The notes under the pieces: model-generated
What the model was told of the DNA's origin: nothing
The model's input: only the letters and a program-made list of their open reading frames with translations
Database searches by the model: none
Assembly: GCA_000708835.1 (NCBI GenBank)
Contig: DF237136.1
Coordinates: 38,928-102,927, forward strand
Source of the DNA: Klebsormidium nitens
Lineage: Eukaryota > Plantae > Klebsormidiophyceae
Reading direction: 5' to 3'
DNA length: 64,000 nt
Position numbers and translations under genes: made by a program
Shown here: positions 37,201-57,753 of the stretch, piece by piece
How positions within the stretch are numbered: the first letter of the stretch is position 1
How the letters are laid out: each line of letters begins with the position of its first letter

Positions 37201-39266
37201 GGTGAGCACCGCGGCATCTCCAAACAGAATGTGCTGGCAGCAGCGGCAGCGGCTTTGGATACAGCGTATTGCTGCGTTTTCTCTCGATCATCGGGGTCTT
37301 GGGTCTCTGCGCCGGCAAATTGCTGCCGTCATTGCGACGTTCCATCCAGACGCTGCCGGCTTCTTGTATGGGCCCTCGTTCACATCAAGCTCAATATGTT
37401 CCCTTATTAAGCAAGTTGCCATGATTCGATAAACACAGCCGCCTACTGATTACCCTCGAACGAAGAGCTGGTCTTTGTGTGCTGCACCAGGCGTGATCTT
37501 CTCGATTATCCCCCCCGTCTCCGAAACGTATAAAGATGCATGTTGGTTCCCTTGGCGCAGGCCTTCATTGCGCGCGCCATCAGTTTGCCGTCCCAGAGCG
37601 AGCTGGCGGACATGATGGCGGTGGCGGACCCTGACGCCATCCACGCGGTGCACAAGTTCGTGACGCGCACCATTGCGGCCGAGCTGCGCGCCGAGCTGCA
37701 GCACGCCGTGGACAGCAACCGCACCCGCGACGCCTACAGCCCCGACACCGCCAGCAAGGCGCGGCGCGCGCTCAAGAACACGGCGCTGGGCTACCTGGCC
37801 AGCCTGAACGAGGCGGACATCACAGACATGGCGCTCGCGGACTTCAGGTGAGGCGAGGGCATGCCCCCCGCGGGGTGAAGGGGATTTCCCAGAAATGTCA
37901 GGGAAGAGGGGACCGGGATTCGTGTCGAACTTCGTGAAAGGGCAGGGGAAAGCTTCGCTTCTTTTTGATTGCGAAACAAATGAAGAGGAAATCGCGAAAT
38001 GATGTGTATGAGGAGATAAAGCCAATACCCGAAAACATCGATTGTCTGACAAGAATTTTCTTTGCGACAAGGATTGCAAGCACCTCTTGAGTAACTACAG
38101 GGTCCACAGGTCTCGTCCCATCGGCCTGATCTGCTTGGACGAGACTACTCAGATTGTCTGTTCTTCGGGTGCTTCCTTTCGTCTATCCTAACTGAGTTTC
38201 GGCAATTCGAGAAATTTGTCCTTGTTCCGATCTCTTACTGCGCCGCTGTCGGCTTCTGACCGCTGGCTGCTGCCCGTTCAGGAGTTCCACCAACATGACG
38301 GACCAGCTGGCGGCCCTGGCGGCCCTGGCTGTCAACCCCGGGGAGGCGCGCGACACGGCGCTGGCGGAGTTCTACGAGCAGTGGAAGGGCGACGGCCTGG
38401 TCATGAACAAGTGGCTCGGCATCCAAGCTGCGTCGTCCCTGCCAGGTCAGCGGCGGCTGGGGTGCACGGCAGGGGAGCCAAGGGAGGGCCAACAGTGCGA
38501 TTCATTGTGATTGCGATTCAGTTGTCGATTCGGAGAAATTTTTGGGGCGAACGTATCGTTCAACTCCGCTTCTGAGAATTGCAACGCTTGTACTCTGTCA
38601 TGCAGGCTTAGGCCTTTGTTTGGAGGACGACATGTTGTACCTAGCGTAAGTTGGGTTCTACTTCAAAGCCGCGCCTTCTCCTGACGGGCTGCTTCTCTGA
38701 CAGGCAACGTGGCGCACGTGCGTTCGCTGCTGGAGCACCCCGCGTTCGACATGAAGAACCCCAACAAAGTGTACGCCCTCGTTGGTGGCTTTGCCAGTGC
38801 CGCCGTCAACTTCCACGCGCGGGACGGCAGCGGGTACGAGTTCCTGGCGGAGCAGGTGCTCAAGCTGGACAAGATCAACGCACAGGTGGCGTCCCGCATG
38901 GTCAGCGCGTTCACCCGGTGGCGCCGCTACGACGACGACAGGCAGAGCAAGGCCAAGGTGAGGCGCGCGGTCACGCTAACGCGTCCGGACGGCTGATCCG
39001 TGGTTCTGCATGCTTCTCGAAACAAGGGTCTCTCGATCCAGGATGTGCCAAACTCATATCCTTCTTCATGTCGCTGCAATGGAAGTTGTAGAATGGCTCG
39101 TCTTTGGTTATCGCACGTGGTCCTTTGATTTTGAGGTTTTTACAGGATTTGCAGTGACGCTCTAGTCTTGATTTTGCAGGCTCAGCTAGAACGGATTGTA
39201 CGGACAGAGGGGCTGTCCGAGAATGTGTACGAGATTGTTTCCAAGAGTTTAGAGCCTGCGTCCTAG
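31202..39266 (+). CDS. pepN: M1-family alanyl aminopeptidase N (bacterial pepN-like plant type) with N-terminal organellar transit peptide
   Basis: [14 protein letters not shown]; [29 protein letters not shown]; [17 protein letters not shown]; [13 protein letters not shown]; [26 protein letters not shown] (HEXXH..E); [17 protein letters not shown]; C-terminus [14 protein letters not shown]. Stop 39264-66. The transit-peptide exons are less certain. Confidence 0.95.
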
Positions 39267-40482
39267 GAGCAAGTCTGGAGCCTCATCATGTGACTCACTG
39301 CATTTTTACGCTGTTGACATTCATAATGAAAGGCCGTCAACCCATCTTAGAGGCCTGAGTTGAGCTCTATTTTGATGCGGAGAATTCTTTTCAGGCAATG
39401 AACAGATTACGCTTTCCACGACGCGTTTCTTCTTCTTGGATACTACAGAACCCCTAGTGCAGGCTCGCGCTTTGAGACAGTCTAATGACACTGGTTCGTC
39501 CTTAGAGGGAGTGTGATTCACATGCGTCAAGTTGCAACGTGGATACAGCGGCGCATGCTCCATGATATCAATCCTTACCCTTTGGCCGAATTCAGTGTCT
39601 ACTCTACAGTGAAGCGTGACTCACGACCCCTTGTAATTCGCCTCATCGAATGATCATACATGAATGTCAGGTTCATCATTTTCGAGGTTTTCTCTGGGTT
39701 GGGCATGTGTTCCGGGATTTGCATGCGCCGCAACCAGAATGACGGTTTCATATCTGTACATGGCAACTGTGTTTCTATCTGAAGATTGCGGTGGCGTATA
39801 CATTGCGCGCATGCTGCAGTCGCTGTTTTCGCATGGCGGCGCATGCTCACTGCAATGATGGCAAATGGTATTAAATATATCTTCGATCATGAATGATGGA
39901 TCTGTGCGTACATACAAGCCATAATGACACATGTGCACCTGCCGACGCACGCAATTCTTGCATGCTGCATTGCACCAACTCCGTATAAATCTCAGATAAC
40001 ACAGTTTTCAGTTCAATATGCGGCCCGCCGATATATGGATTGCAGGCTGGCATGCAATCTATACTTTTCAATCAACTCCACATGAAAGAAGCTCAGCGGA
40101 ATGTCAGTGTTCAATTTTGTCGGCGACGCTGAAGTACAATGACAGGTCAAGATTGCAATTTGTATGCAACTGCAATTCGTCACTATCATAGTATGCAATC
40201 TCTGCAGACCAAGCAATGAAATAACCTCACCGACTTTGCTTTCAGTATACAAGTACATGATCAGTGACTCGAGTACCGTGGACCTTTAATAGGTACCTTT
40301 CAGTACAACTCGACCATACCTGGCCTAGCCTTAATGGCTGCTGCGCCGCAACGAAGGACGACCATACCGCAAGCTTCAACCTGACTGCAGTTTCATGGCT
40401 TCGTCTAAGTTCAGCCTTTGACTGTTTACGCGTGCATAAATTTTCTCGAACGAAATGTGAGGAATCTAGGGCCACTCGTTGG

Positions 40483-42986
40483 TCACGCCACTCTTTCCAA
40501 CGTGTGAACGTTTTGAGGAACAGGACACACCGGTAGTGGTGGTGAGATGCTTGCTTCTGCCCCGTTCAACTTCCTCTTCTCGACGGCCGTCAGCTCCTCC
40601 CCCCCTGTCTTGCTTGACATGGACGTACCCCGTGAGAAAGGCCGCTGCTCTTGAGGGGCTGCTGTCGGCTTCTTCTCCTCTGATGTAGAGGCAGCTCCTT
40701 CCGTGACTGGGGGGCCAAACATCCACCGGTATGCATTTCTCCCAGCAACACTCATATCGTTCCGCAGTTGCCGCAGCTGCAAGAAGAACGACATTTCAGT
40801 TGAAAATGGGGAAGGTGCCGTCTGAACCTTGGTCTCAACGTTGCTTGACCAGCTAGACATCATTGTCGGTGCAATGGGCTCCATGATCGTGCAACGTGGA
40901 GGTTGTGGACTCGAGGTGCTGGTTAGAGCTGTTAAAGCCCTCTCTCTCTGCCACCAAGGAAGGAACTGCAGGATATTCAGGGTCAGCAAACGATCGACTT
41001 GAGCCTGCTCGATAAGCCTTGGCAGGTGCCTTACCTGAAGCATGGTTGCCCCGGCTAAATCTGCGGCAGAGTCACCAACATTGGCGAATCTATTCACCCA
41101 AGCTGCACATAACGGGATGTGGCAATTGTAAGGACAAGCAGCTTCTCGGGACACCGCTATTCGACAGTGCAACGCTCTCCCATTGATCCTTGCTACCACT
41201 CTAGGAAAGTACATTCAGCTTACTGAGTTCACTTCGAAAATCTATCAAATGCAGCAACACCTGTCGATTTACAAGTTGATGCCAAATCAAACGATGATTC
41301 AAAATGGCTTCAGAGATTTGGACACCGGCAGGTCGCCTAGCGGGAGAGGGCTTCAACGGTGCAGCTTTCCTGGTATGACTTTCACAAAGAGGGGATTGTA
41401 ACCGAGAAGGGGCCCTCACCTGGTATGAGCCCCACCCCAAGCCGTTTACTGAACTCATCACAGAAGTGGTTGCAGTTTTTTGCCAGCAGGTCATATGAGC
41501 TGCAGGGAACGTGGACAGATAAGTGAGGCCATTTTGAGAGTGCGGTCTGCCAGGTGTGTGGAGTGCGCTCATCGCCATAGAAACAAGTACAGAAGCTGCA
41601 CAACTGCACCTGGCTGCAATGTTCAGCTCCTTACTTTGCAGAAGCTCTGGAAACCTTCAGTTTATCCTGAACCAAACGTGTGCAATTCCAAACTCCTCTC
41701 CCCACTTTGTAGTCTTTAGTTACCCGACCCCCTCTCCTTTTTTTTTGGTGCCGCAGGAAAAACCTGAGACTCAGAGAATGTCACGTGGAGGCGTTGGAGC
41801 TCAACAGGAGAAGTCCGCTCACACCGAGTCAAAGCTGGCTGCGATGGGTAGAAAGAATGGGGCCCACAGATACCAAGAAATGATTTCCTTTGTGATACTT
41901 GACAAGCAGGCCTTACTCAGAACCACAGTGGGCACAATGACCTGCAAGCAGACCGGATGAACAATCTTGGAAATAGAAGCGAACTGACAGCACCCTTGTC
42001 TGCGTCTTGCCATTCTGACCACAAGGTTTAACAACTGGGACTATGTAAAAGACTGCTGGGCTCCCCAAATGTCAGAATCAGGCACAGTCCAGGACCCCAC
42101 CTGCCGGGCCACTCCTTGGAGAGGGCCACCAGGATCTGGCGCACTTTCTGCTGGTCGAATGCTGTCATGCCCAAAGGTATGGACTCGCGGTACTTGTACA
42201 TGGGGTTCTGCTTGGGGGGGCAGGAGAACACCCCTGACCCATCCTCGCAGTACCCAAACGACCATTCCTCCCCGTAGACCTGCACAACACCAAAGGCGAT
42301 TGCATAAGGTCCCTCTGAAGACAAGGCTGCTCAGATTGGCAAAGGAGGGCATGCTCTGGTCGTTTGCCTTTCACGTGGCTTGATTTTGAATCGACCATAC
42401 TATACTCGCTAGCAACTAATCATACTGCTGACTTGGTTCGTCAGCAAAAAAACTATGTTTGCCTGTCCAGAAAGCGAGCACAAACCTGAAAGCAAAGTCA
42501 TTCAAGACCTTGGATGCAGGGTGCGAGCCCATTGGATAACCCACTCGAGTTTCAAAACAAAGTATTCGAGAAATGCAAACGCTTTAGTTCCTTGTCCAAA
42601 GGCTTGGTTTTAGTTCCACTGCTCTGATTGCACCGTGCTTGGAAACCCTGCAAACTTTGTGATAGAGTTACATGAGGCAGCAATCTCTTTTGGGGGCAAC
42701 AACAAAGGTTGGGCAATCCAGGAATCAAACACTTCTGCCTGGAAGTGCGTCGCACGGGCAGCACTTCAATAACTGGGGCCACTTACTCGCGCAAAGAATG
42801 CCCCCTGAAATCAGCCTTTGAGGTTCCATCATTGACAAATCTTACCTCAATCGCTCCATGGAAAATCCCTCCAATGCCGAGAGCGTCCCTGGTGATCCGG
42901 TTGATTCGTAAGATGTTCGCATTCGTGGAAGGAGTAGAATTTGTAACGTCATACACATGCAGGGTGGCCATGGAGACGTCAGCCAT
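40483..42986 (-). CDS. PPPDE / DeSI (deSUMOylating/deubiquitinating isopeptidase) family peptidase
   Basis: LHVYDVT..LGIGGIFHGAIE|VYGEEWSFGYCEDGSGVFSCPPKQNPMYKYRESI..EWPG|.SYDLLAKNCNHFCDEF..G|WVNRFAN. Catalytic His (FHG) and Cys (NCNHF) are present. The C-terminal end is less certain. Confidence 0.92.
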
Positions 42987-44013
42987 ATAGCCACCTTCAC
43001 GCACTCCCTGCCGCTGCGGCTTCAGAAAGGGATTGGAAGGTGAACAAGACGCCTTCGAATCTGAAATGCACTTCTTGCACGGAGTCGAGATCCGAGAGAA
43101 TAGGTCCCCTACCAACCTACGGTACCGTAGTGGGGCAGAACCCTAATTTCGTCGAGCCTCATATAGGTCGGTACCTACTCGGCCATGTGCGTGACTCATG
43201 GGACTTGGTGCAGGTTCAAGTTCAACCTCGCTGGTTGCTGCGCAGGACAGATGAGGATCAGGAGCAAATTGGAGCATGGGCAGCATCCGGGCAGCATGGT
43301 GCAACATGATCCAGGGCACAGCTATATAGGGACAAAAGGAACGAAGAGAGGACCAAGATCAACCAGGGGCGGCCATCATGACGTTTGAGCGCGTCAGTGG
43401 GGAATGTATGAGCCAGCGTGAAGTCAAGGCAGCAAAAGGCAATCCTCTGGAGACAATGAAGAAGTTTCTTATATGATGATCCGCACATGATGGCACTAGT
43501 GCTGCGTTTCAGACACGGGCCGTCCGCCCAATCCTGTGTGCAAAAGGTCACGAAGAAGGTGCGGCTTTTACTGATCAGCGGTTTAAAATTTGCCTCATCC
43601 TTGTCAGACTTCATTGGAGTGAATGTAGGCAAGGGAGCTGGGTTTGACAGCTGCATTGCAGCTTGGATCTCTACGCATTATTTACATGTTGAGTTTTGTT
43701 CCCTCTTTAGCTCTCTGCTAAATCACGCATATCACCCAACTCATGGTTTTGAAAGATGCCTTTATGCTACATGGCACAGCACTATGCATGGCTTCAATGC
43801 GTGTTTGTGCCTGGGGCAGCAGGCGTAATGGTATTCTCTGCGGTGGTTGGCACCTCCAGGATATGACTGCGGCAAATCTGTTAACTCCAAAGCCGAGCCC
43901 CGAATCGTTCACAGGCGACAGACAGCCGACTCATCGTCCAACCTAGGTGACCCCCCAGCTTAGGGCCTGCGGCAGCGCGCTGCCAGCAATCGCCCTCCGA
44001 GATCGCATTGCCG

Positions 44014-46639
44014 ATGGGATGCATAGGGTCCAAGAATGTGACAGAGACGAGACGACCCCCCGGATACGAGGAGCCTGAAGTTCTGGCCAGTGAAACAGCA
44101 TGTAAGTGGCACCGCGTCTCCTTGGCTTGCCCGCAGGGCCATGTGCTTCTTAGAACCCAGCTTCCAAATGATTCTGTGCCGCAAGTGTTCTCAACTTCAT
44201 CATTGGTGGTCAAGATTATAGCATGCTCACATGACGCTTAAGTCCTACATGTTGCAAAGCAGTGTGTCTTTCTTTGGCGGTTTGTTCTGTTGGTCACCCA
44301 CCCAGTGTCCCTGGAGCCTCGTTACAGACCCTTGTCTGCAGCTCCTCGCTCGAAGCTGTAAGTTTTAAGACCTGCCTTGGTGGCTCTCAGCTGATGTCTC
44401 TGTTCCCACGGTTATGCAGTTTCTGTTAGCGAGGTTGAAGCGCTTTATACACTCTTCACCAAAGTGAGCAACAGCATCATCACAGATGGGCTCATTCACA
44501 AGGTAAGACAACCACGGCGATAGTATAGCTGTCAAAAGCCTTATTGCACCACTGATGACCTGCCATTTTTAAGTGGATGGGTTATTTTGGTTCAGCATGT
44601 GCAGCATCCATCATGCCAATGTTGCCGATTGGCAGCTGGGGCTAGGTGGTCAGAGGGGCATGATTGGTGATTGTTGTGTCTGTTCTATTCAGGAGGAGTT
44701 CATGCAGGCCCTCTTTAAGAATAGCAACACAAACAACCTCTTCGCAGAAAGGGTGAGCCCTCTCGACCTTTGCCAAATGTGAGGATGTCAAGGTCTTAAA
44801 TTGCTGCCATTACCTTTGCAAGACGAGCGGCGTTTTCCATTTCTATGTCCCAATTGCCGGTTGCTTCAGGTTATTGCATGTCCAACTTGGGAGCCTAGCA
44901 GTCAGTATTTCCACGTACTGCTCGAGTTCAGCAAACCAACAGTTTTTGTATCTTGGTACATGTGACACAGTGCTTGTCAGGCACAACCTCTCTGGCCGGT
45001 TGCACTCGGCACAGCAAGACGTGGTCTGTTTGTGAGGCAGATTAATCCAGTCTTTTCCAAGAAAGAGGGAGACACAGCCAACCTTTCCTAGTGGAGACCA
45101 ATTTTTAGATCCAGGGCAGAGAGCTAACAGTACACACATCCCTGAACCCTCAACTGCAGGTTTTCGAGCTGTTTGACATCAAACGCAATGGCGTCATCGA
45201 GTTTGGCGAGTTCGTGCGCTCCCTCAGCGTGTTCCACCCCAGGGCCCCCACCAACGACAAGCTGGCCTGTGAGGCGGCGCGCCCCGATGTCTCTCCAACA
45301 CCTGCCTGCCACACTTGCGCTGCGCCTACTACTGCCCAATAGGGCAGCTGTGGAAACAGGGTGTGCCTGCTCAGGACGGCCGTGGTTCTCAGACCAGAAC
45401 CGGACGATGCGACCTTCTTTTCTCCGGCTGCGAATCTGGACTCTTCCGTTTCCCTTGTCAATCGCTCACCCTTTTGGTGCTACTGCAGTTGCATTCAAGC
45501 TTTACGACCTGCGCCAAACGGGGACGATTGATATCGTCGAGGTGCGTTGCCTAGCCACTCCGGCTCACCACGACTCGTTGCATGTGCTGACACCTGTCCT
45601 TGAAAGAGCCGCTGCACAACGCAGCAATTTCCATTTAAGCGCTGGCCGGACCATCAGGCGATGGCATCCACACTCGAGAGTTGTCAATAAGAGCTGTCTT
45701 TCAAGGAGGTACAGTGCTTTGTTGACATGCAGTGCGAAGCGTGCTGGACTTCGAAGCAAGGCCAGCCGCTAACACATGTTGCTGTGCGTGCAGGTGGAGA
45801 TGATGCTGACTGCGTTGATGAAGGAGACACCCGACCTGGACTTCTCCGACGAGGTCATCCGCCACATTGTCGAACAGGTCAGGCCCGCAACACTAGCGGG
45901 AATGAATGAGTCGCTCGAAGGGAGGGCGCTTTATGGGGTTTCGCTCCTCGCGTTGAGTTTCCAAGTCGGTAAACACGGAGGTGGTCGTTCAACTGCTGGA
46001 CTCTTGGATGGCTATTCGCAGCCGTCTATCTGTGAAGGCGCCCTCGCCACTTCCTGCTTTGCTTTTCACCCTCTGGTTGACTGCATCCAGAGGCGTTTTA
46101 GTGGCAAACAACCGCAGAGGTAACGCGTGTGGTGTGGGTCCGGTGCAGACCTTTGCGGAGGCGGACACGAACCAGGACGGCAAGATCGACCAGGAGGAGT
46201 GGGCGGTCATGGTGGAGAAGCACCCCAACATCCTCAAGAACATGACGCTGCCCTCGCTCAGGTACGCCCGCAGCGGGGCCCCGCCTCAACGGCGGCAGGC
46301 ATCATTAGTACACCCGGGAGTGGCTTTCCGTCCAACCCCGTAACTTGTTGGACTTGGAGTTGTGGCGTATATTTTGCAGGTGACGTTTTGTTGAGCACAG
46401 AATAAAACCACAGAAATGATTTGAACAGGTATTTTCGCGTTTGGCATACCTCAATGTGTTGAATGCGTTATTCAGCTTTTGGCGTAGCTGAATGTGTTGC
46501 ATGCATGCATCAGCTTGTTTAGGCTGCCGTTTAAAGTAATGACTAACGATTCTCGCGCAAGTGCAGGGACATTACAAGCGACTACCCGTCCTTTATCTTC
46601 CAATCGGGAGTCGATGATGCCCCTATGGATGACGAGTAG
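44014..46639 (+). CDS. CBL: Calcineurin B-like calcium sensor, MGC-type (myristoylation/S-acylation motif), 8 exons
   Basis: [22 protein letters not shown]|[21 protein letters not shown]|EEF (extended EF1 loop)..[65 protein letters not shown]|[11 protein letters not shown]. Stop 46637-39. Confidence 0.96.
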
Positions 46640-47954
46640 ATAATGAGGGCGGGCTTTAGAAAAGGGGGGGGGCTGTTTTCAACGAAGTGCGGTGCTGCAG
46701 CTTTGCTCCTAGGTGTTGAGAGAGAAACATTCATTGCAGAAGAGTTTTCGACATTTGACACAATCCAATTAATCTGCAGAGACGAAGTTTGTGAAACTTC
46801 AGCTTCTTGCCTACTTATGTTTTACCCCTTGTGGGAGCCGGTGACCAGAATTCGAGCAATCCCAGATCGACTCGTTGTTGTATTTTAGATGTGTCGACCA
46901 TGTGCGACTTCAGTTTTGTAACTTGAAGCTTGATGGGTCAATAGAGACAACGCAAAAGGCTGGGCCTATGCGACCAAAAGTGCGAGCTAGTCGGAAAGCC
47001 AGCTACAAAGGTCTCCAAGCGGCACTGAACCATGTAATCGATCATTGATTTCAGTTGAAGAAGGATGACTTCTGCCGGAAGTTGAACCGGGCAAAGGACT
47101 GCTAGCTAGTGCTTTTCTCTTTTCATGCAAAACGGCGTATAGCCACTCGCGACTGTCGAGTCAAATTTTTTGAATATGCAGTAGAACTTTCTGGCATATA
47201 TTGATAAGCGAACTGCCCAGGCAAATACGGACATGCATGACTATAAAATTGTCGTGATCGATTCTATATATTTTGCGAGGTGGCTGGCCGTAGGCCGGTC
47301 AGCTCCAACGTTTCAGCTAGGTATAGGACGGTCGTGATTAACTCCATCGACTCACTCCGACTCGTCTAAAGCAAGTATGTCAGTCCATAATTTGATACAA
47401 AGTATGATCATTCGCTGCGGCTCACGGTTGCTGCACGCGCTCAGTCATATAAGGACGCATGCAAAGGCCGAATTTTGATATATTGCACATCAGTCGCTGG
47501 CAAGAGCTATATATGTCCGGTTGCATATGTACCCTGCATGGCGGCGATGATTGCAAGACCGGTATACACAGACTACGTATACAGAGTTCCAATGCGCATT
47601 CGGACACGTCCACGTGAACTGTGACAGCCTCGAATAAGCATGTCTTATTATTGCCTAGTTGTACAAGCAACTTTCAACCTTTTCTTGTTCAGGCCCGATC
47701 AAGAGAGGCCGTAAAGCTTCAACGAAAGCATACTGAATATATGTACAAGCGAATGACTGCCTCGTTGCGCCGCAGTGCCATTCTTTGCCAGCGAACCCAA
47801 ACCATAATTATTGACGATGATCACCCTAAGCTGGCGGCCCACGACAGCGACGAAGAGAGCGCTGCATCTACCGTACACCCCTTTATAACAACTCATTACC
47901 TGCTTACCTTTTCAATGACATGGAGCTGACCAAGCTCCATGTAGGGGGCCTCTG

Positions 47955-50900
47955 TCACGTGGCAGGTCCGGTAGCAGGCCCCTCATCCCCGGTTGCAACC
48001 GCCCCGTTGGTGCTTGCAATGGCTGAGGCCTTGGAGGCACTCCCGTCCATGGCACTCAGCTCCGACTTCCAAATGATGTCGGTGCACTTTTGACACAGCA
48101 GCTTGTAGAACTGGTAGACAACAACACGGAGGTCAGGGGCGAGGTTTGGCTGTCGGCAAGCTGGAGGGCACCCGTGGAAACTTGTGGACCAGATAACTCC
48201 GCCGTCCCCTCAAGCGACTCCTTCGTACGCCAGACGTGAGCGTGCCGAGGCACTCCAGCACACCCCCGCCCTCCTCCTTGAAAGCGACGGTGACGAGCGG
48301 GCGCTCACCTTGTGGTACTCGAGCGTGTCGCCGCCGGCCTTCCTGACCTCGACCATGTGTAGGCCGGGCGCCATCTCAAACACCTCGACGGCCACCTGCA
48401 AGATGCCCTTGTGCGACGCGGAGCGGCCCTCCATCCGAATCTGCACATGCCACGCACACGCCCGCCGCAATCAGTGATCACGGTCAGGGACTTGGAGGCT
48501 TGCCGCATGCACCAGAGCTCAAAGCCAAACGAAGGTGCGCGCACCAAGCGGAAATAGAAAGTGCTCCCTTTGACCTGCGGTACGCTCTGCATCTAAATAC
48601 TGAAACTTTGAATGGAGAGCTGCAGTTTGAACTTTTACAACGCGTGGCCTGCCATCCGAAGCTGCCGTCTGTGCCTCACGCCGGCTGCAGTCCATGAGCG
48701 GTACCGGTGCTCGGACCGCCAGGGCAGGGGGTCTGGAGTATACCTTGTAGTTGCGAGTGGCGACAGTGAAGCCGGCTGCGCTGGCAGCGGTAGCAATCTT
48801 TTGGACAATCTCCTTGGCGGGCCGCTTGGACGTGAAGCGCGTCTGCCGCTTCACCATGTGGTCCTGAGCGCGAAAAGTGGAACGAATCAGCACATCGCTG
48901 CAGGATAGGCCAGACCGTTGTAAGCGATGGCAAAGTGGAGGAACCGAACGTGAGGGTGACGGGTCGCGAGGCGAAGTCGGCAATCGTCGGTGCTCAATGC
49001 CGGACCATTAAAAAGTATCGGGGTTGCTCCTGATGCGGCGAGGCCATCGGCGTGGGCAGGCACAGCTATTGGAGCGGGCGGGTGCACGCACCTGGCGCTT
49101 CTCGAAGAAGGTGGAGAGGTTGAGGCCCTGCGAGAGGGTGATGAGCTCGAAGGCATTCATCAGGTGCGGCTTGACCTCCTTTTGCTCCTTCTGCTCGCTC
49201 ACGTGGCTGTCCTGCACGCCGCATGACAATAGCGACCAGTGAGGTCAGCCTGTCAACGGTATCGGAAAAGCAAGGCATCAATCCAAGGAGACTTGAGTGA
49301 GAGCAGACGACTATACATTGCATAGGCAAAGGAGGCCGATGAGAAGGGATGATATTGATGAGGTTCAAAGGCTCGGAATGCAGAACCGAACGGGCGAGCA
49401 ACTTGCCACAGGAATTAGAGAAAGCTGTCTGCTTTAATGCATCGGGCAATTCAGTTGACGGCTGAGAAGGGCGGTGACTGGTCGGTGCGGGCCAGACGAT
49501 GTCGGCAGTACCTCGTTATTGCCAAACACGGCGGCCACATCGTCGGAGTCGTCGGTGTTCTCCTCGAGGGGCTGCACTGGGTGGTACCCCTTGGTGAACC
49601 AGGGGTCGTTGCGCAGCCCGCTCACGCGAATCCGCTGCACGGCAAACAAGAGGAAACGGCGGCTGAGAAGGAACAAGATAAAGCGACGGGGCCTGATTTA
49701 GTACAAGGCAAGCGTTGGTAGTACGGACAATCCGTGCGATGTTGTTCCCAGGTTTTGTCAGCAAAAGCCGGGAACGATAATCGGTTCTTAACGAAAGCAG
49801 TGAGCGGCTCACCGTCTTAGGATTGGGGTCGAGCAGCTTGCGCAGGACGGCTTTGACGCCCAGTGAGAACCAAGACGGACAGGTGAAGTCAGCGCGGTGG
49901 ATCTGCAGCAGCGGGAGGAACGGAGCGGATGAGGAAGAGAGACGACACAGTCGCTCAACCCGTGTCAATGACTGAAACGAGTGCCCCGAAAGAAAGTCGA
50001 GGTCAAGTGATCCAGCGCCCCCAAAGACTTGAATCACAAATATTAGTATGATTTTTCGGTGCAGATGAGCACCTGTCCATTTTCAGCAGGATGGAGAGCA
50101 GACAGGACAGTCCCCAATTTGTGCACCAGACCACCCCTCAGATAATTGGACCATCGATGACCCAGAGAACGAGCCCCGAGGTCGCACCTTTTTATAGAGC
50201 GTCATGAGGTCCTGCTCATCAAAGGGCAGGTAGCCTGCCATCAACACGTACAAAATGACCCCGCACGACCAGATGTCAGCCAGGGCCCCGTCGTAGCCCT
50301 TGTCATTCAGCACCTGCAGAAGAGCAGACACAGCAGACTTCAAGGATGGGTGCGTTCAGGTAGCTTCTACATCTCTACGTGTTAGATAACTGGTTGGATC
50401 CGCCAGTCTTCTTTCATTATCTTCTGACAGCATCCCTTACTGAAACGTGGTGATCGTTGATCTGTTCTTACACTCGGACTTAGCAGTCCTCCCTACAGAG
50501 CTCCTCGACCTTGGTCAAAACTCAAGAAGCCGCACCCGGCACGGGTGGCAGGAGCACCCACCTCGGGAGCAACGTAGTTGGGGGTCCCGCAGGTGGTGTG
50601 AAGGAGGCCGTCATCCTGCATCATCAAATGACTTTCATGAAAATCAGAAGTAAGCTTCTTATTGTGTTGGACACATGGAACAACAGCGGGAGAGGTTATC
50701 TGAATCAACACTTCGAAACCATGGCAGTGCCCGTGGTGGCGGAGCAGCAGTTGGAAAACGGCCGCACCTGGACTTGCATGGGCAATGCACTCAGTCCAAA
50801 GTCTGAGATCTTCAAGTTCCCCTTGGCGTCCAGGAGAAGGTTCTCGGGCTGCAAGAGGTATACAAGAGAGACCTGGGGTGAGGAAAATCGTCAAAGAGGG

Positions 50901-52071
50901 AGGTGGCAAAACTTCGAAAGGGCTTGCAAGCAGTTGTCCCCCTGCGCTGTAAGAGGCAGAGCCGAGGACCTTGTGAAAACAACACGATGCCGCTACAACT
51001 CAATGGGAACACAAATGTCCTGACGGTGGTTTTAATTCATGTACAGCAAACCTGTTCCAGTTGATTCAACGATCATCACTGGTAGGACACAACCAGGAAA
51101 GAGTACCTTCAAGTCCCGATGGAACACGCCTTTGCTGTGGCAGAAGTCAACTGCGTCCACCAGCTGCTGGAAGTAGCGCCGCGCCTCGTCTTCGGGCAGC
51201 TTGCCTTGGTGCACCTGGCAGCAGCAAGTGTGCGTCATTCCAGCAGTAGACACGCCGGTGAAGCATGGTGGGTACCAGGGGATTGCTGTCAAAGCTCCAA
51301 CTTCAATCCAAATCACTTGATTGAACTACTACCAATGCCCCTTGATAAGGTAGAGGTACTCACAATCTTATCGAAGAGCTCCCCCCCCGTCACAAGCTCC
51401 AGTACAATGTAGATCTTGGTCCGACTCGCCAGGACCTGGGAGGGGGAAGGGGGAAAACAAGTGTTGAGGGTGAAAATGCTCTAACAAACCGGGCCTTCTT
51501 GGATCAGCCCATGCATCGCCTCAACACAAGGATTGCTAGCTCAGGGTCACATGCAATTCCAGCTCTGCCAGCTAAGTTGCAGCCGCTGCTGATCTACCCA
51601 CATTACAAGACGCAAGTTGGATATGGTGTTGTCTGTGAGAGCTTACCTCGTGCAAATGCACTACATTTGGATGCCGGACCAGCTTCATTATGGAGATTTC
51701 CCGCTTGATCTGCATCAAGGAAGGCCCATTCGCTTTGAATCATCAGATGCCAGAGCAGCCCTCCAGCTTGCACTTGCATCACCTAGGTCCAAATAGCAGC
51801 ACTGGAAAGTGACAGCATTGCAGACTCGACAGGTGTTTCCCAATCCAGGCAGCCCTAGATGGAACCATTCAGGACTAGGATGCTCGCCGACCTTTGTCCT
51901 GCTTACCTGCTCCACCATCTTGTGCTTCAAGATTTTCTCCTTGTCCAAGATCTTCATGGCCACGCTCTCGCCCGTCTCTGTGTTGACGGCAAACTTGACC
52001 TTGGCAAATGTGCCTTCCCCCAGGGTCCTGCCCACCTCATACTTCCCAACCCGGCGCACCGTCTGCATCAT
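47955..52071 (-). CDS. CIPK: CBL-interacting protein kinase (SnRK3), intron-rich type, 13 coding exons
   Basis: [20 protein letters not shown]; HRDLK|PENLLLD; [23 protein letters not shown]; NAF motif [20 protein letters not shown]; PPI region [12 protein letters not shown]; [15 protein letters not shown]|FY. Twelve phase-0 GT-AG introns. Confidence 0.97.
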
Positions 52072-52738
52072 CTTGGCCCCCGCATAGAAGTGAATGGGCA
52101 GCGAGGCACGGCTCTGCGGTCGTACGTGTCCTGTCAGCCCATCGGGCTTGATAAATTCTTCAAACTCAAATCAGTAGATCAACAAGAATTATGCCAATTG
52201 GCAACAAAGACGGTCAGCCCACGCGCTTGTTCCGCAGCACCAAGGACAACACTGCATGCTGTTTGGGCTTGTCTCCACATTACTCTAAGCTCCACCAATT
52301 ACTGCCTTCGGTCCACTATACGCGGCAGAAAGCTTTCCGTTTGCTCTTGCATGATCCGTCATGGAGATCACCCCTAGAACCCCGTACTCGAGAGGTGGTG
52401 GTGGGAAGATGGATAGCGGCCCGGCCCTTGCAACTGATCACCTGGTGTTGATCAAGAGGAGATTGTTGCCCCCATCATGCAGGGGCCACGTACCTACCTT
52501 GCAGACCAAATGCACAGGTTAAATTCTCAACTTAAACCGGAACCCAAGGGTTTAGGGCAAACCCCACACCCTCAACACTAAGTGGCCAACCGTTAACCCT
52601 TCAACAGGCTAACCCCACCCGTCTCATGCACACAAAACTCTGCCTCAGAGTCAAGGTGGTGCCACTACTAGCACTAGGGCAAAACGGACAAAACTTGTGA
52701 ACTCCTTTCGATTTTTCGGACGTCGGACGCTTACTTTC

Positions 52739-52757
52739 TTTTTTTTTTTTTTTTTTT
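52739..52757. repeat. Poly(T) tract (19 nt)
   Basis: Directly visible, in the divergent intergenic region upstream of CIPK. Confidence 0.9.
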
Positions 52758-53245
52758 CCCGTCAGGGAGGAAGGTGGGCATCCCCCTCCGAGCTAGGGTT
52801 CCCCTCGGAACCGCACTAGCTCGAGGGTTCAAAGGATGCTTAAAAACAGACCGGGTTATGCTCCCGGGCCACCTCCTTTTATCGAGCAATAAAGTCGGTG
52901 ATAAATCACTAGTAGTGGAAGTTGATTAAAAAGCGATCAAGCAAAATCTATATGGTTGCGCCGTTATCATCGAATGAAGGAGATAAAACCAGGTAGCCCT
53001 TATTGTTAAGTTTGCAAAAGGGAACCATTTGTGTCCTCAGATGCAAGAATCGTTTTATGCGCCGTCTTTTGTTTTTTGTGTGAGAGGTGCGGAGGTTATA
53101 ATAGAGAACTTGGACAGATTGTAATAAACGGCATTTTATAGTAGCTTACTTTCCGCTGAATCGGAAGGTACCGCGTAGAAGGGATAAGCGTACAGTATGT
53201 ACTCCGTAAGGCACCTGGCCAGGCAACCGGGCACTCGCTGTGACA

Positions 53246-53388
53246 TTAGGGTTAAGTCACAACGTAGTGATGTTACGCCACTCCCTCTGACGGTTTGTTA
53301 GGGTTACACCCCTTCCCTGTGACTGCTCTCAGATTAGGGTTCCACTAACGGCTAAGCCATTGTTCTTAGGGTTTTGCTGTGTTTAGGG
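53246..53388. promoter_or_regulatory. Cluster of five TTAGGG telomere-motif (telo-box-like) sites
   Basis: TTAGGG at 53246, 53298, 53334, 53366 and 53383; the first four read TAGGGTT. They lie 220-360 bp upstream of the ATG at 53606. Confidence 0.55.
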
Positions 53389-53605
53389 CTACCCGACTGT
53401 TGGGACAGAGGTACCGCAGTCTGAAAGCCCCACCGTCCGGCGTCCGAAAAAACGAAAGGAGTTCACAAGTTTCGTACCTCTTGCGCCACTGGGGAAAGTA
53501 GAAATTGAATGGAATGGAGCAACAAAGAGTCACAGGCCCTTTCTTTAGCAACAAATAGAAAGGGCACTTGTGGGTAGATGCAGGTACGTATTGATACCAT
53601 CCGTC

Positions 53606-56477
53606 ATGTGGAAGTGGATTTCAGATACGGTGGGCCCCCCATTGGGTTTTGCCACCACCGATGGTATGCTCACAAAGGAGCAGGTGCTGGACTTTTGCAG
53701 ATTGAACCTGGCTGCCCTTGAAAAGCCAGGTGCGGCGTGTTGTCCAGATTGGAAGAACTGTCCTGGACTACTGTTCTCAAAGAAGTGTTGTGGCATTCTG
53801 GTAAACACTCAGCTTGTAGCTGGGCTCAAATGCAAACCCCCCGTGGTGCAAAATGCGCTTGTCATTAAATTTGTTGGCTGGATTTGCAAACAAAATTGCT
53901 CAATTTGTTGGCTGCAGAAGTGAAGCAGAGGATTGCTGAACACTTCAAAGCTGGAGAGGTGAGTGGCTTTCTTAAACCGTCGAGCTCTCTTGAGAGGAAG
54001 CCAGTTGAAAGAAAGAAATGACTACAATCCAGCGAGCAGCACCACCCCCATCATCATATCTAGGTGGGGAGAAACTATGAGATTTGACCACGTTTGGTGC
54101 TCAATTTCAAGTTGGCCTTGTTTGGTATTTGGGATTTTCACTTACCAGAGGCTTGCAGCTGATCTTTGAGTTCTAGCAGGCAGCAGCCACCTATGTAAAG
54201 GAGGCAACCCTTTACACCCGATAAGCAGTCTGGCTGATTGTTGGGGTGACCTGTCAACAAGTATGTGGGGAAGTAGTTCAAGAAACTTGCAACATTTTCC
54301 CCACATTTCAATGGCAAGAGGTGTCGGTTGGGGGACAAAATGTTGGCGTAGATAACAAGAGGGTGCATCACTCACTATGGAAGAGCCCCCAACTTCGCTG
54401 TATATGTTTGTTGATCCAGCAGGCCGCGGAAATGACAACCAAGGTCCAGGAGGAGATTTTCAGCTCCATGGGGATCGGTAAGTATGCCTTGGGGGCTTGA
54501 GCAAAAAGTTGATCTGAAAGTTTTCCATCTTCTCGTTGTCGAGTTTGGCATTGGCTATCTTGGCGAGCAGGGCGCCTCGTATAGACGGGGCCTCCACCGG
54601 ACGTCAGCTATGGTGTAATCACTTGGAGCAAAGTCTTCTTGTCCAATGGAAGTATCAGCACTCAGTCCGCCTTCACTCTTACTGATGTTCCCTTCCTGCA
54701 GAACCAAAGTTCGGCATATCTTGCTTGGGGCGTGTTGGGTCTGTTTTCAGGAATGATCAAGAAGTAAGGGTTCAAAGCTTTTCTTCACCTGATATTGACG
54801 GAACTTTTGTTGATCATTGCACTTTCTGAGTTCCTCTCGTCTTCCAAAGATCTGGGCAGCTGTCCAAAGCTTGTCTGCATTTGATACCTTGAGGTGTTAC
54901 TTGCAACTGCTAAGTGTTGGTCCTTTCTTTGTGTCGGCAGGTCATGATGAACTTTATGGAGCTGATAGGAAGGTGAGCCACATCTTGACTGACTTGCCAC
55001 TGATCTCTGAACAACTTGCCCCTCCTTGCTCACAGTCCCTTCTTGTAGGTTTCTACCTGCACCTGTGCATTTGCGTTGGACAAGGGGGCTTGGCCAGTTC
55101 CCAGCTGGCGGCTTGAAGGCTAACTCGTCCTTTTTGTTGGCAGGGAGGAGTTGGCGTGCGATGAGGCGGAGAAACCTGAAGAGTTCAGGAAAAAGATGGA
55201 ACTCATGCAGAAGATGCATGAACAGGTGGGGCAGCAGATCCATATGTTGCTGACAGCATACCCTTGTCTTGTTGTGCGCATGCAGATGAATTCGTGTTCA
55301 CGCTCTTTGACTTCCAGTCGTGGCAGGTGTATCTGACCTTGCCCCACTTTCTAAACGCAAGGCGTACTCCATCTTTCGGCTTGGCTGAGACTCAGCAAAC
55401 AAAGCCTTATCCCTGGGGCCCCAAATGGGGGGGTTTCCTCAAGCGGCCTCTCCGGCTATTGGCCGAAGACCAGACTGCGTGATACAATGACTTCGACATA
55501 GCCGTTCGAACAGGCCCTCGTAGGCATGGTGCAGGGCCGTTTACTTCCAGTCCGAACATCTTCTCCGAAACCAGGAAGCAACCACCAATCAAAGTTGTTG
55601 AAGCTGAATAACTAAAATGATCACTTAACATCCATCAAGTCGCCTGGTCGATGTATCTGCTCAGCTGCTGAATCAGCGCCTTACTTTGGTGAAGCTCCCA
55701 GGTTGAAGCTAGTGCAGCCTAGCTGGATGGCCTCTTTTTCCATTTCTTGTGATACTTTCCAGGAATATGAGCATGAACCACTTTGATACAACTTTGGACG
55801 GCCATAGTTCGCTCCATTCACGCATTCTGATAGACCGACTTCAGACTCCGCCAGGCGGCGGCCGCCAAGAGTCACTAGGTGAAAGTGACTCCTGTAGTCT
55901 GTGCACACCAGGGGCTCTACTGTTCCCCGAAGAGAATTTCCGATTCTGCCCGCCGAACTGGGCCAAACGTGAAGTACCTAGGGGCTAACCAAATCGATCT
56001 CAAGGGCAATCGACTTACCTGCGAACTGACTCTTGAACTGTAGCAAGTTGCAATGGAGGAGCATCTGAAGGGGAAATCACCAGAGGAGCGGTTGGCCTTC
56101 ATCCAAAATGTGAGTTGCTTAGCTTCATCGGGACGTCAAGCTTGGACGTCAGTTCCGGATTGCTTGGCGCCTCGCAAATTGGGGGTGCCTGTAAGCAACA
56201 TGGGCCCTCGATCTTGATTGAGACGAGTCGATTGCACCCAGTGCTGAGTGGAAATTGTTGAGCTTTTTTAAGACACGTCCTCTTTCTACAGATGCAACGA
56301 CAAATGCAACAAAGCAAGACGCAAACCGGGGTAGGAGGGAACAATGTTGTAAGCCCTCAAGAGCAACTGCATTTCTTCCAACAGCAGTATGCACAGTCAG
56401 GGCCCTCTCAACCAAGCAGAGCAGCTTCCTCTAGTGATAGGGCTCAGAACACAAGCAACGTGGTACAAAGACGGTAA
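53606..56477 (+). CDS. Conserved plant protein of unknown function, multi-exon
   Basis: Spliced: MWKWISDTVG..GMLTKEQVLDFC..|EVKQRIAEHFKAGE|QAAEMTTKVQEEIFSSMGI|EPKFGISCLGRVGSVFRNDQE|VMMNFMELIG|REELACDEAE..|QVAMEEHL..|MQRQ. Consistent GT-AG phases. Resembles an uncharacterised land-plant family recalled from memory (QEEIF.EMG.DPRFGLACLG..ENDQDL..EEMACDEAE). Confidence 0.8.
55367..55974. mobile_element. MITE family 2, copy B (608 bp), intronic
   Basis: TA|CTCCATCTTTCGG ... CCAAACGTGAAG|TA; colinear homology with 13107-13683. Confidence 0.75.
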
Positions 56478-57753
56478 CATGAGCATCGGGCTTTCAGTAG
56501 CGTCATGATCAGTCCGGAGTGTAAATAGACGTCAACTCGTTTTCGCCTGGAGCGGGTGTTAGATCCCGGGACCAACTTAAGTATCCATGCATGTTCACCC
56601 GGCAGTATGTAAATACTGACAGGTTCGCGGGCTCGTCCCTGCCTATTACATGCAGGCGTGCTTCAGGTTGACCTAGAAATTGCGGATGTGGAACTTGGCA
56701 TGGTGCTTATAGCGCATGATCTCCAAGTAAAGGTAAGTTATAACCACGAATCTGCAGCTCGCAATACACATTATACATATATCAAATTTCCAGCTTTGTG
56801 ATCGCGATATACTCAAGCTACTAAGGCTCGTACATTGCACATGTTGGATTGCGTTGGCCGCCTGCATGATCGGTGCCATGTGCACCGCGAGCTTAGTGCG
56901 GCACTGAGCTCGGTGGCCCGCGCGTTCATCTGAAGTTGCAGCCGCCATGCCAGGGCCCTATATATATTGATGCAATTTGATCGGACTGTTAAGGCTCATA
57001 TGCATCCATAAATTGAAAGGCATGTCATGTGCAATACATGTGTCTTAGTAGGATTCTATTATAAGTAAGCCCATTCTCACTGTAGGATGCATGACTCGTA
57101 ACTTGAAAACGGAAGTATAACACCGAAAACGTGAATGGACCCACCTATACCGTATATGTGGGTATGATACCTGCTTTGCACCCATGTGCCGGCCCACTAA
57201 ACCCCCTTGATTACTGACCTCACCCGTTCTGCCAGGTATATTCTGATGTCGTAAGCTTATACCTTCTAGCTAACCACTGACGAAGTGACCATTGCATGGC
57301 TACCATTGCCAAAGCTGTAGTAAGGTCCATAGCTGACTCGAGATACATGGCAACATCAATACCGATGATTTACGAAGATCCGGTGTCTCACAATGAACCA
57401 ATGCGACTCGCCAAAATTGGAATGAGGTCCCTAAGTTTGATACGAGTGGCAACATTGTACTGTCCCGCTGATTTTGATTGATAAGGTGTCTCTCATGTCT
57501 AATCGTGTTAGGTATGATACAATCGAGTCTCTAACCAAAGCCAAGTGGCCTTTAGCCTGGCGGTCATTGAGACTCTTTCAATCAGCCACTCGGACTACTT
57601 CCTCGACAAAAGTACCAATTTGCAAATCGAGTACAAAAGCGCGCATGACCGAGTTTAAGACCTCCACGTCAAGCAACGGACCAAGCATTCAACACAGGGG
57701 GATAAGCCAACTTCAGCTGTTTTCTTCCAGATAATTGGAGCACCAATTGTTAG

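What the first reader, a model, noticed from the sequence alone, without database searches (positions are those of the whole stretch)
44014..52071. Physically linked CBL-CIPK calcium-signalling module: sensor and cognate kinase tail-to-tail, 1.3 kb apart
Seen: a complete CBL (+, 44014-46639) and a complete NAF-motif CIPK (-, 52071-47955) converge with 1315 bp between stops. Established: CBLs activate CIPKs by binding the NAF motif. To my knowledge the two families are dispersed and unlinked in angiosperms. Inference: in this early-diverging streptophyte the two halves of the pathway form an adjacent two-gene module, possibly a relic of ancestral linkage, or co-regulated through overlapping 3' ends or antisense RNA.
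Basis: partly seen in the sequence, partly recalled or inferred. Interest (0 to 1): 0.8.

Follow-up and report, generated by a model that had tools for sequence, protein, structure and literature searches.

The report
Adjacent calcium sensor and kinase genes
In the alga Klebsormidium nitens, the only CIPK kinase gene lies next to one of the three CBL calcium-sensor genes that activate such kinases. Both genes are ordinary and already published, and the adjacency is not shared by any other green lineage I could check.

Summary
The window is Klebsormidium nitens scaffold DF237136.1.

- **The two genes.** An 8-exon CBL (+, 44014-46639, 220 aa) and a 13-exon NAF-domain CIPK (-, 52071-47955, 469 aa) converge with 1315 bp between their stop codons.
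- **Support.** Exon translations match the family domains. Spliced RNA-like contigs from four studies match every intron in the stretch examined. The public annotation calls the same two genes.
- **Identity.** They are the published KnCBL2 (GAQ84394.1) and KnCIPK1 (GAQ84395.1). They are most like Arabidopsis SOS3 and SOS2.
- **Prior reports.** I found no paper that remarks on the adjacency.
- **Chance.** With 3 CBLs, 1 CIPK and 16,215 genes, chance adjacency is about 4e-4 for this named pair. The pair was picked after the fact.
- **Ancestral linkage: not supported.** No CIPK lies within 10 kb of the CBL in Closterium, Marchantia paleacea, Selaginella, Trebouxia or Chlorella variabilis, or on five environmental contigs over the partial flanks they hold. 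Published gene IDs show none in M. polymorpha or Physcomitrium.
- **Overlapping 3' ends: not seen.** Transcript contigs stop about 380 bp apart in all four runs.
- **Promoters.** They lie at opposite ends and share no motif beyond chance.

Verdict: a real, canonical sensor-kinase pair. Its adjacency is a lineage-specific curiosity of modest interest.

The parts
44014..46639 (+). CBL calcium-sensor gene (KnCBL2), 220 aa. Coding exons: 44014-44101, 44420-44502, 44693-44752, 45160-45268, 45489-45541, 45794-45877, 46149-46261, 46567-46639 (includes the stop).
   Evidence: Frame and splice-site reading. 100% identical to P0001, 220 aa, K. nitens. EF-hand Pfam hits on exons 4 and 7. Spliced contigs confirm introns 4-7, and a loose end confirms the exon 3/4 joint. 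Best solved relative is AtCBL4/SOS3, E 1e-76 over residues 1-209.
46640..47168 (+). CBL 3' untranslated region: the furthest reach of CBL transcript contigs.
   Evidence: Contigs joined to exon 8 run on to 47092, 47099, 47144 and 47168 in runs X1, X13, X5 and X7 (table 8).
47169..47550 (.). Spacer between the two transcript ends, with no RNA contig.
   Evidence: Depth is 0 in bin 47200-47399 in all four runs, although low-depth intron-retaining contigs are seen elsewhere. No Rfam family. No notable repeat. No N.
47551..47954 (-). CIPK 3' untranslated region.
   Evidence: Contigs spliced to the last CIPK exons begin at 47551, 47555, 47555 and 47573 (table 8).
47955..52071 (-). CIPK kinase gene (KnCIPK1), 469 aa. 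Coding exons: 52071-51907, 51709-51647, 51435-51364, 51214-51107, 50848-50768, 50615-50562, 50313-50188, 49902-49813, 49634-49512, 49211-49092, 48863-48744, 48440-48309, 48110-47955 (includes the stop).
   Evidence: Frame and splice-site reading. Pkinase hits on exons 1, 4 and 7. The gene called in the public record is 469 aa with Pkinase+NAF. Eight introns from 48111 to 50767 are confirmed by CT..AC joints, and a loose end confirms the exon 4/5 joint.
48744..49211 (-). NAF/FISL CBL-binding motif, split over exons 10 (49211-49092) and 11 (48863-48744).
   Evidence: Pfam NAF PF03822: E 1.9e-9 (profile positions 1-24) on exon 10 and 1.4e-7 (positions 24-53) on exon 11, both above the gathering score.
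48309..48440 (-). Exon 12, part of the C-terminal phosphatase-interaction (PPI) region.
   Evidence: phmmer against PDB: CIPK23 (4czt) residues 378-420 at E 3.5e-11, and CIPK24/SOS2 (2ehb_D, 4d28) at about 1e-10.
40483..42986 (-). Upstream divergent neighbour of the CBL: Peptidase_C97 gene, 253 aa.
   Evidence: Called gene at L001 6470-8973; window position = L001 position + 34013.
53606..56477 (+). Upstream divergent neighbour of the CIPK: 216-aa product with no Pfam family on record.
   Evidence: Called gene at L001 19593-22464.

Best explanation
This is the canonical CBL-CIPK calcium-decoding pair of Klebsormidium nitens: KnCBL2, which resembles SOS3/CBL4, and the genome's only CIPK, KnCIPK1, of the SOS2/CIPK24 group. 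The following mechanism is inferred by homology. The CBL is anchored to a membrane through its N-terminal MGCxxS lipid-modification motif. It binds Ca2+ with its four EF-hands and then clamps the NAF motif in the kinase's C-terminal regulatory region. That releases autoinhibition. The active kinase phosphorylates its targets and also the serine of the CBL's C-terminal YPSF motif. The genes are convergent immediate neighbours. Each has its own promoter at the outer end of the 8-kb unit, and their transcripts end about 380 bp apart. I read the adjacency as a lineage-specific arrangement that arose by chance rearrangement in the Klebsormidium line. I do not read it as an inherited, conserved or mechanistically coupled two-gene module.
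For: Gene identity and completeness:
- Exon-wise Pfam hits are EF-hand, Pkinase and NAF.
- The CBL equals P0001 over its full length.
- Its best solved relatives are AtCBL4/SOS3 (1v1f, and 2ehb, the complex with SOS2) at E about 1e-76. The 14-residue first EF loop, the MGC start and the (F/Y)PSF tail all align.
- CIPK exon 12 matches the PPI region of CIPK23/24.
- The exon translations show GxGxxG, VAMK, HRDLKPEN, DFG and the full activation loop with its Ser/Thr/Tyr.
- The published phylogeny puts the single K. nitens CIPK in the AtCIPK24 group.

Expression and splicing:
- Spliced contigs come from four studies.

Arrangement:
- The called gene order is Peptidase_C97(-), CBL(+), CIPK(-), unknown(+).
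- The accessions GAQ84394.1 and GAQ84395.1 are consecutive.
- No transcript contig lies in the spacer.
- The longest k-mer shared by the two upstream regions is 10 nt, inside the range of 200 shuffles.

No conservation:
- No kinase lies next to the CBL in ten other loci.
- Gene IDs show no adjacency in M. polymorpha or P. patens.
Against: For a pre-named pair, chance adjacency is only about 1e-4 to 4e-4, so pure chance is not a comfortable explanation by itself. The nearest relatives could not be examined: other Klebsormidiophyceae, Chlorokybus, Mesostigma, Chara and Coleochaete. Linkage could therefore be old within part of the streptophyte grade. Only one CBL per multi-copy land-plant genome was looked up by context. 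Contigs cannot exclude rare read-through antisense transcripts. No binding, kinase or co-expression data for these two proteins exist here.
Confidence: 0.75

Rival explanations
1. Relic of ancestral linkage. The single ancestral CBL-CIPK pair of green plants or streptophytes was encoded by neighbouring genes. Klebsormidium kept that state and other lineages lost it.
For: Green algae are thought to have started from a single CBL-CIPK pair. The sole CIPK of K. nitens sits beside the most plant-like of its CBLs. The chance expectation for this pair is low.
Against: No adjacency was found in Chlorella variabilis or four related environmental picoalgal contigs, which share a different conserved block (FTCD_N, CBL, malic enzyme, glutamine synthetase, CDC48). 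None was found in Trebouxia, Closterium, Marchantia paleacea, Selaginella or an unidentified streptophyte-like contig. Gene IDs show none in M. polymorpha or P. patens. This reading would need many independent losses.
Confidence: 0.08
2. A selected co-regulation module within Klebsormidium. The adjacency is young but is kept because a shared chromatin domain, or transcriptional interference or antisense effects between the convergent genes, balances the doses of sensor and kinase.
For: Both genes are expressed and spliced in all four runs examined. The tail-to-tail spacing is short. Convergent pairs can regulate each other where their 3' ends overlap (yeast, PMC6993858, seen).
Against: No contig crosses the ~380-bp spacer in any of four studies, although low-depth unspliced contigs are recovered elsewhere. 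The promoters are 8 kb apart at opposite ends and share nothing beyond chance. Contig depths cannot be used to test co-expression (tool caveat).
Confidence: 0.14
3. Assembly artefact. The two genes were joined falsely in the 2014 short-read scaffold.
For: The genome was assembled from 454 and Illumina reads into 1,814 scaffolds. No independent assembly was available here.
Against: The sequence from 40000 to 57000 is continuous with no N. The 3' UTR contigs of both genes extend several hundred bases into the spacer and match it exactly. There is no repeat in the spacer at which a misjoin would be expected.
Confidence: 0.03

Closest known systems
Arabidopsis SOS3 (CBL4) - SOS2 (CIPK24) salt-stress module
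   Same: These are the best solved relatives of both proteins. Shared features are the MGCxxS start, four EF-hands with the long first loop, the (F/Y)PSF tail, the kinase core, the NAF motif and the PPI region. The published tree puts KnCIPK1 in the AtCIPK24/8 group.
   Different: In Arabidopsis the two genes are megabases apart, and no CBL neighbours a CIPK (locus codes from my memory, not tested here). In K. nitens they are immediate convergent neighbours. A function in salt or K+ signalling is untested in K. nitens.
Single CBL-CIPK pairs of chlorophyte algae (Ostreococcus, Bathycoccus, Chlorella)
   Same: A minimal network of one sensor and one kinase (citing Edel et al. 2017).
   Different: In Chlorella variabilis and four related contigs the CBL lies in a conserved block of FTCD_N, CBL, malic enzyme, glutamine synthetase and CDC48 with no kinase nearby. 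Those genes have few or no introns. K. nitens has three CBLs.
CDPK/CCaMK, where the calcium sensor and kinase are fused in one polypeptide
   Same: The same logic of coupling an EF-hand sensor to a Ser/Thr kinase that is relieved of autoinhibition (established knowledge).
   Different: Here the sensor and kinase are separate genes on opposite strands with separate transcripts. Nothing suggests a fusion or a fission intermediate.
Convergent gene pairs regulated through overlapping 3' ends (cis-natural antisense; yeast study PMC6993858)
   Same: Tail-to-tail orientation with a short distance between the stop codons.
   Different: The transcript contigs stop about 380 bp apart, and no overlap was seen in four runs.
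Conserved linkage of interacting regulators in plants (CCA1/RVE with PRR genes, PMC9516744)
   Same: Functionally interacting signalling genes found physically close together.
   Different: By its title, that linkage extends across the green lineage. The CBL-CIPK adjacency was found only in K. nitens.

Membership tests
Calcineurin B-like (CBL) calcium sensors | Four EF-hands, the first with an unusual 14-residue loop | tested here: met
   EF-hand Pfam hits on exons 4 and 7 and precomputed EF-hand families on P0001. The first loop aligns residue for residue with that of AtCBL4, and EF2-EF4 keep their acidic position 12.
Calcineurin B-like (CBL) calcium sensors | N-terminal MGCxxS/T myristoylation/palmitoylation motif (plasma-membrane type I CBLs) | tested here: met
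   The protein starts MGCIGSK.
Calcineurin B-like (CBL) calcium sensors | C-terminal FPSF motif with the serine phosphorylated by CIPKs | tested here: met
   YPSF aligns with FPSF of AtCBL4. The serine is kept and F to Y is conservative.
Calcineurin B-like (CBL) calcium sensors | Ca2+-dependent binding to a CIPK NAF motif | not testable with these tools
   Needs yeast two-hybrid, BiFC or pull-down with KnCBL2 and KnCIPK1.
CBL-interacting protein kinases (CIPK/SnRK3) | N-terminal Ser/Thr kinase domain with intact catalytic motifs and the activation-loop Ser/Thr/Tyr | tested here: met
   Pkinase hits on exons 1, 4 and 7. The exon translations show [20 protein letters not shown] and DFG...APE. 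The called gene carries Pkinase.
CBL-interacting protein kinases (CIPK/SnRK3) | NAF/FISL motif in the C-terminal regulatory region | tested here: met
   PF03822 scores 38.0 and 32.0 bits on exons 10 and 11 against a cut-off of 25. The called gene carries NAF.
CBL-interacting protein kinases (CIPK/SnRK3) | PPI (PP2C-interaction) region after the NAF motif | tested here: met
   Exon 12 matches CIPK23 residues 378-420 and SOS2 residues 373-415 at E about 1e-10 to 1e-11.
CBL-interacting protein kinases (CIPK/SnRK3) | Intron-rich 'algal-type' gene structure | tested here: met
   Thirteen coding exons. Eight introns are confirmed by spliced contigs and a ninth by a loose end.
Conserved (ancestral) linked gene pair / microsynteny block | The same adjacency in other lineages | tested here: not met
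   No Pkinase/NAF gene and no CIPK-exon tblastn hit (E<=0.01) within the flanks of the CBL in L002-L012. Mp and Pp gene IDs are not adjacent. Closest relatives were not sampled.
cis-natural antisense (3'-overlapping convergent) pair | Transcripts of the two genes overlap | tested here: inconclusive
   In four runs the contigs end at 47168 or before and start at 47551 or after, with depth 0 between. Contigs show presence, not absence, so rare read-through is not excluded.

The most novel reading that the evidence does not exclude
The adjacency is not chance. Under this reading it is a linkage of the sensor with its only kinase that is maintained in Klebsormidiophyceae, or is older within the streptophyte grade. 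It would keep the two in one chromatin or expression domain for dose balance and was broken up only in the Zygnematophyceae-plus-land-plant line.
Probability: 0.15. Interest if true: 0.55.

Novelty: already known. Interest (0 to 1): 0.3.

Why it matters
CBL-CIPK signalling is thought to have grown from one sensor-kinase pair in algae into the 10 x 26 network of Arabidopsis. If the founding pair had been physically linked, that would say something about how interacting partners are kept in balance before families expand. It would also give a simple genetic handle: one 8-kb locus to delete or transplant. The evidence here points the other way. The pair is canonical and already catalogued. Its adjacency is confined to K. 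nitens among the genomes reachable, and no coupling of the transcripts is visible. The practical value is small but real. The whole minimal module, both genes with their own promoters, fits in about 11 kb (42987-53605), which is convenient for functional work in a streptophyte alga.

Tried and rejected
- **Prokaryote-style ORF listing.** It was useless for gene models, so I replaced it with frame-by-frame reading plus splice sites.
- **First Pfam call.** It failed on a wrong exon coordinate. I corrected it.
- **Full-length CIPK protein.** No stop-free stretch is long enough to reach a 469-aa protein in the word search. All CIPK evidence is therefore exon by exon, plus the public gene call.
- **Big representative search.** Not used. 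The operators flagged it as costly, and neither protein is 'open'. Its 50% clustering would also bury the streptophyte-algal CBLs among land-plant ones.
- **Failed look-ups.** Sphagnum (P0089) and Diphasiastrum (P0061) are not on record.
- **Metagenome scan.** It returned only chlorophyte-like intronless CBLs and no Klebsormidium relatives.
- **Literature.** Searches for reported linkage, for kfl00187 and for the GAQ accessions found nothing.
- **Other notes of this scan.** None mentions CIPK, calcineurin or NAF in this genome.
- **Contig depths.** They look roughly parallel for the two genes across runs. I rejected this as co-expression evidence, because depth per contig mainly tracks run depth and the tool warns against using it.
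- **Shared promoter motif.** Rejected.
- **Hidden RNA gene or repeat in the spacer.** Rejected.
Full report
**What is there.** The window is part of Klebsormidium nitens scaffold DF237136.1 (158,955 bp, assembly GCA_000708835.1). Window position 1 corresponds to record position 38928.

The plus strand carries a CBL gene of eight coding exons from 44014 to 46639. I derived the model by reading the frames and the GT/AG sites. It gives 220 codons and is identical to public protein P0001, 'Calcium-binding EF-hand family protein [Klebsormidium nitens]'.

The minus strand carries a CIPK gene of thirteen coding exons from 52071 down to 47955. The exon lengths sum to 469 aa. That equals the length of the gene called in the public record, which carries Pkinase and NAF.

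**Evidence that the genes are real and complete.**
- Exon-by-exon Pfam scans give EF-hand on CBL exons 4 and 7, Pkinase on CIPK exons 1, 4 and 7, and NAF above its gathering score on CIPK exons 10 and 11.
- Against solved structures, the CBL is most like Arabidopsis CBL4/SOS3, E about 1e-76 over residues 1-209. This includes entry 2ehb, the SOS3-SOS2 complex.
- That alignment shows the MGCxxS lipidation start, the long first EF loop, three further EF loops with their acidic twelfth residue, and a YPSF tail aligned to FPSF.
- CIPK exon 12 matches the C-terminal regulatory (PPI) region of CIPK23 and CIPK24/SOS2.
- The exon translations show the glycine loop, the VAMK lysine, HRDLKPEN, DFG and the full activation loop.

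**Expression.** The runs that hold this DNA hold about half of its sampled words, as expected for spliced RNA. I laid contigs of four runs from four studies on 45000-50999. They show GT..AG (or CT..AC) joints at every intron I had predicted in that stretch, twelve in all. Loose ends fit the exon 3/4 joint of the CBL and the exon 4/5 joint of the CIPK. The kind of these runs is only guessed to be RNA. The exact intron joints support that guess.

**Published identity.** Table S1 of Tansley et al. 2023 lists KnCBL1 GAQ81593.1, KnCBL2 GAQ84394.1, KnCBL3 GAQ80563.1 and KnCIPK1 GAQ84395.1. The text states that K. nitens has a single CIPK, placed in the AtCIPK24 group. The only CIPK is therefore the gene in this window. 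The consecutive accession numbers fit the gene order found, so the CBL here is KnCBL2. This last step is inference, because accession numbers are masked for the window's own proteins. Both proteins have thus already been used in published phylogenies. In the searchable literature I found no statement that they are neighbours.

**Is the adjacency more than chance?** K. nitens has 16,215 annotated genes. With three CBLs and one CIPK, the chance that the CIPK has a CBL as an immediate neighbour is about 3.7e-4. It is 1.2e-4 if only this CBL counts. That is small, but the pair was noticed after the fact in a scan of the whole genome. Any of thousands of known interacting pairs would have drawn the same remark. 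The figure alone does not establish meaning, so I looked for conservation.

**Conservation test.** Using CBL relatives from two word searches and one metagenome scan, I fetched the genomic surroundings of the CBL, up to 10 kb each side. I read the called genes and searched the DNA with the thirteen K. nitens CIPK exon peptides. No hit at E<=0.01 appeared in any locus.

| Locus | Source | What flanks the CBL |
|---|---|---|
| L002 | Closterium sp. NIES-68 | No neighbouring gene called |
| L003 | Unidentified streptophyte-like Logan contig; same eight-exon CBL | 5.1 kb downstream, no kinase |
| L006 | Marchantia paleacea | Next gene is a PP2C, 8 kb away |
| L010 | Selaginella moellendorffii | DEAD helicase and VHS/GAT genes |
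| L011 | Trebouxia sp. | OHCU decarboxylase and Tub genes |
| L007 | Chlorella variabilis | FTCD_N, CBL, malic enzyme, glutamine synthetase, CDC48 |
| L005, L008, L009, L012 | Four environmental picoalgal contigs | The same block as Chlorella (L005 is cut just upstream of its CBL) |

- L004 is a further environmental contig of only 1.9 kb, so it is barely informative.
- Gene identifiers in the same Table S1 show that no CBL neighbours a CIPK in Marchantia polymorpha.
- They show the same for Physcomitrium patens. Two of its CBL-CIPK pairs share a chromosome but lie hundreds of gene models apart.
- The CBL in Chlorella and its relatives does have a conserved neighbourhood, and it is not the kinase.
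- The ancestral-linkage reading would therefore need repeated independent losses, and I rate it low.
- The important gap is that I could not reach the nearest relatives: other Klebsormidiophyceae, Chlorokybus, Mesostigma and Chara.

**Coupling of the transcripts.** The genes converge, so they cannot share a promoter. Each has a divergent neighbour at its 5' side: Peptidase_C97 for the CBL and an unannotated 216-aa product for the CIPK. The two upstream regions share nothing longer than a 10-mer, within the range of shuffled controls.

In all four runs the CBL 3' contigs end between 47092 and 47168 and the CIPK contigs begin between 47551 and 47573. The 47200-47399 bin has zero depth, even though low-depth intron-retaining contigs are recovered elsewhere in the same runs. 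There is no Rfam family and no notable repeat in the spacer. So I saw no 3' overlap and no antisense RNA. Contigs cannot prove absence.

**How it most likely works.** What is shown here is two intact, expressed, spliced genes with every diagnostic motif of a type I CBL and an intron-rich CIPK. The mechanism below is inferred from the Arabidopsis SOS3-SOS2 and CBL-CIPK23 systems:
1. The lipid-anchored CBL binds Ca2+.
2. It then binds the NAF motif of the kinase and relieves its autoinhibition.
3. The kinase phosphorylates its targets and the CBL tail serine.
4. A PP2C can dock on the PPI region.

What the pathway controls in K. nitens is unknown. The authors of the Marchantia study suggest ion homeostasis under salt stress as the original role of this CIPK group.

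I also did not launch the costly representative search.

**Verdict.** This is a textbook sensor-kinase pair that happens to be adjacent in this alga. I found no conservation of the adjacency and no transcript coupling.

Noticed in passing
L007 8626-21617; L008 8365-17213; L009 8925-17353; L012 8294-17095; L005 418-7435: Chlorella variabilis and four environmental picoalgal contigs share a conserved gene block around their CBL: FTCD_N, CBL, malic enzyme (tail-to-tail, only 12-60 bp away in the compact genomes), glutamine synthetase, CDC48. L005 is cut just upstream of its CBL, so its FTCD_N side is not seen. The sensor's neighbourhood is conserved there without the kinase.
   Followed up: partly
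L006 22392-24231: In Marchantia paleacea the next called gene downstream of the CBL, 8 kb away, is a PP2C phosphatase. PP2Cs are known partners of CBL-CIPK complexes, but the family is large, so this may mean nothing.
   Followed up: no
window 45515-45821, 45848-46175, 46233-46593, 48413-48750: Low-depth (3-14x) unspliced contigs span introns of both genes in several runs, next to the high-depth spliced forms. They may be retained introns, pre-mRNA or a trace of DNA in the libraries.
   Followed up: no
Physcomitrium gene IDs in PMC10953335 Table S1: Two CBL-CIPK pairs share a chromosome in P. patens (Pp3c5_9970 with Pp3c5_7750; Pp3c16_24350 with Pp3c16_15230), hundreds of gene models apart. 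With 28 possible pairs on 27 chromosomes, about one such case is expected by chance (the chromosome number is from my memory, not checked here).
   Followed up: no
window 53606-56477 (+): The divergent neighbour of the CIPK encodes a 216-aa product with no Pfam family on record.
   Followed up: no
L003 946-3560: A Logan contig from run SRR22405887 carries a CBL with the same eight-exon structure and similarly short introns. It is about 62-66% identical to liverwort and lycophyte CBLs and has no close named relative. The organism was not identified.
   Followed up: partly
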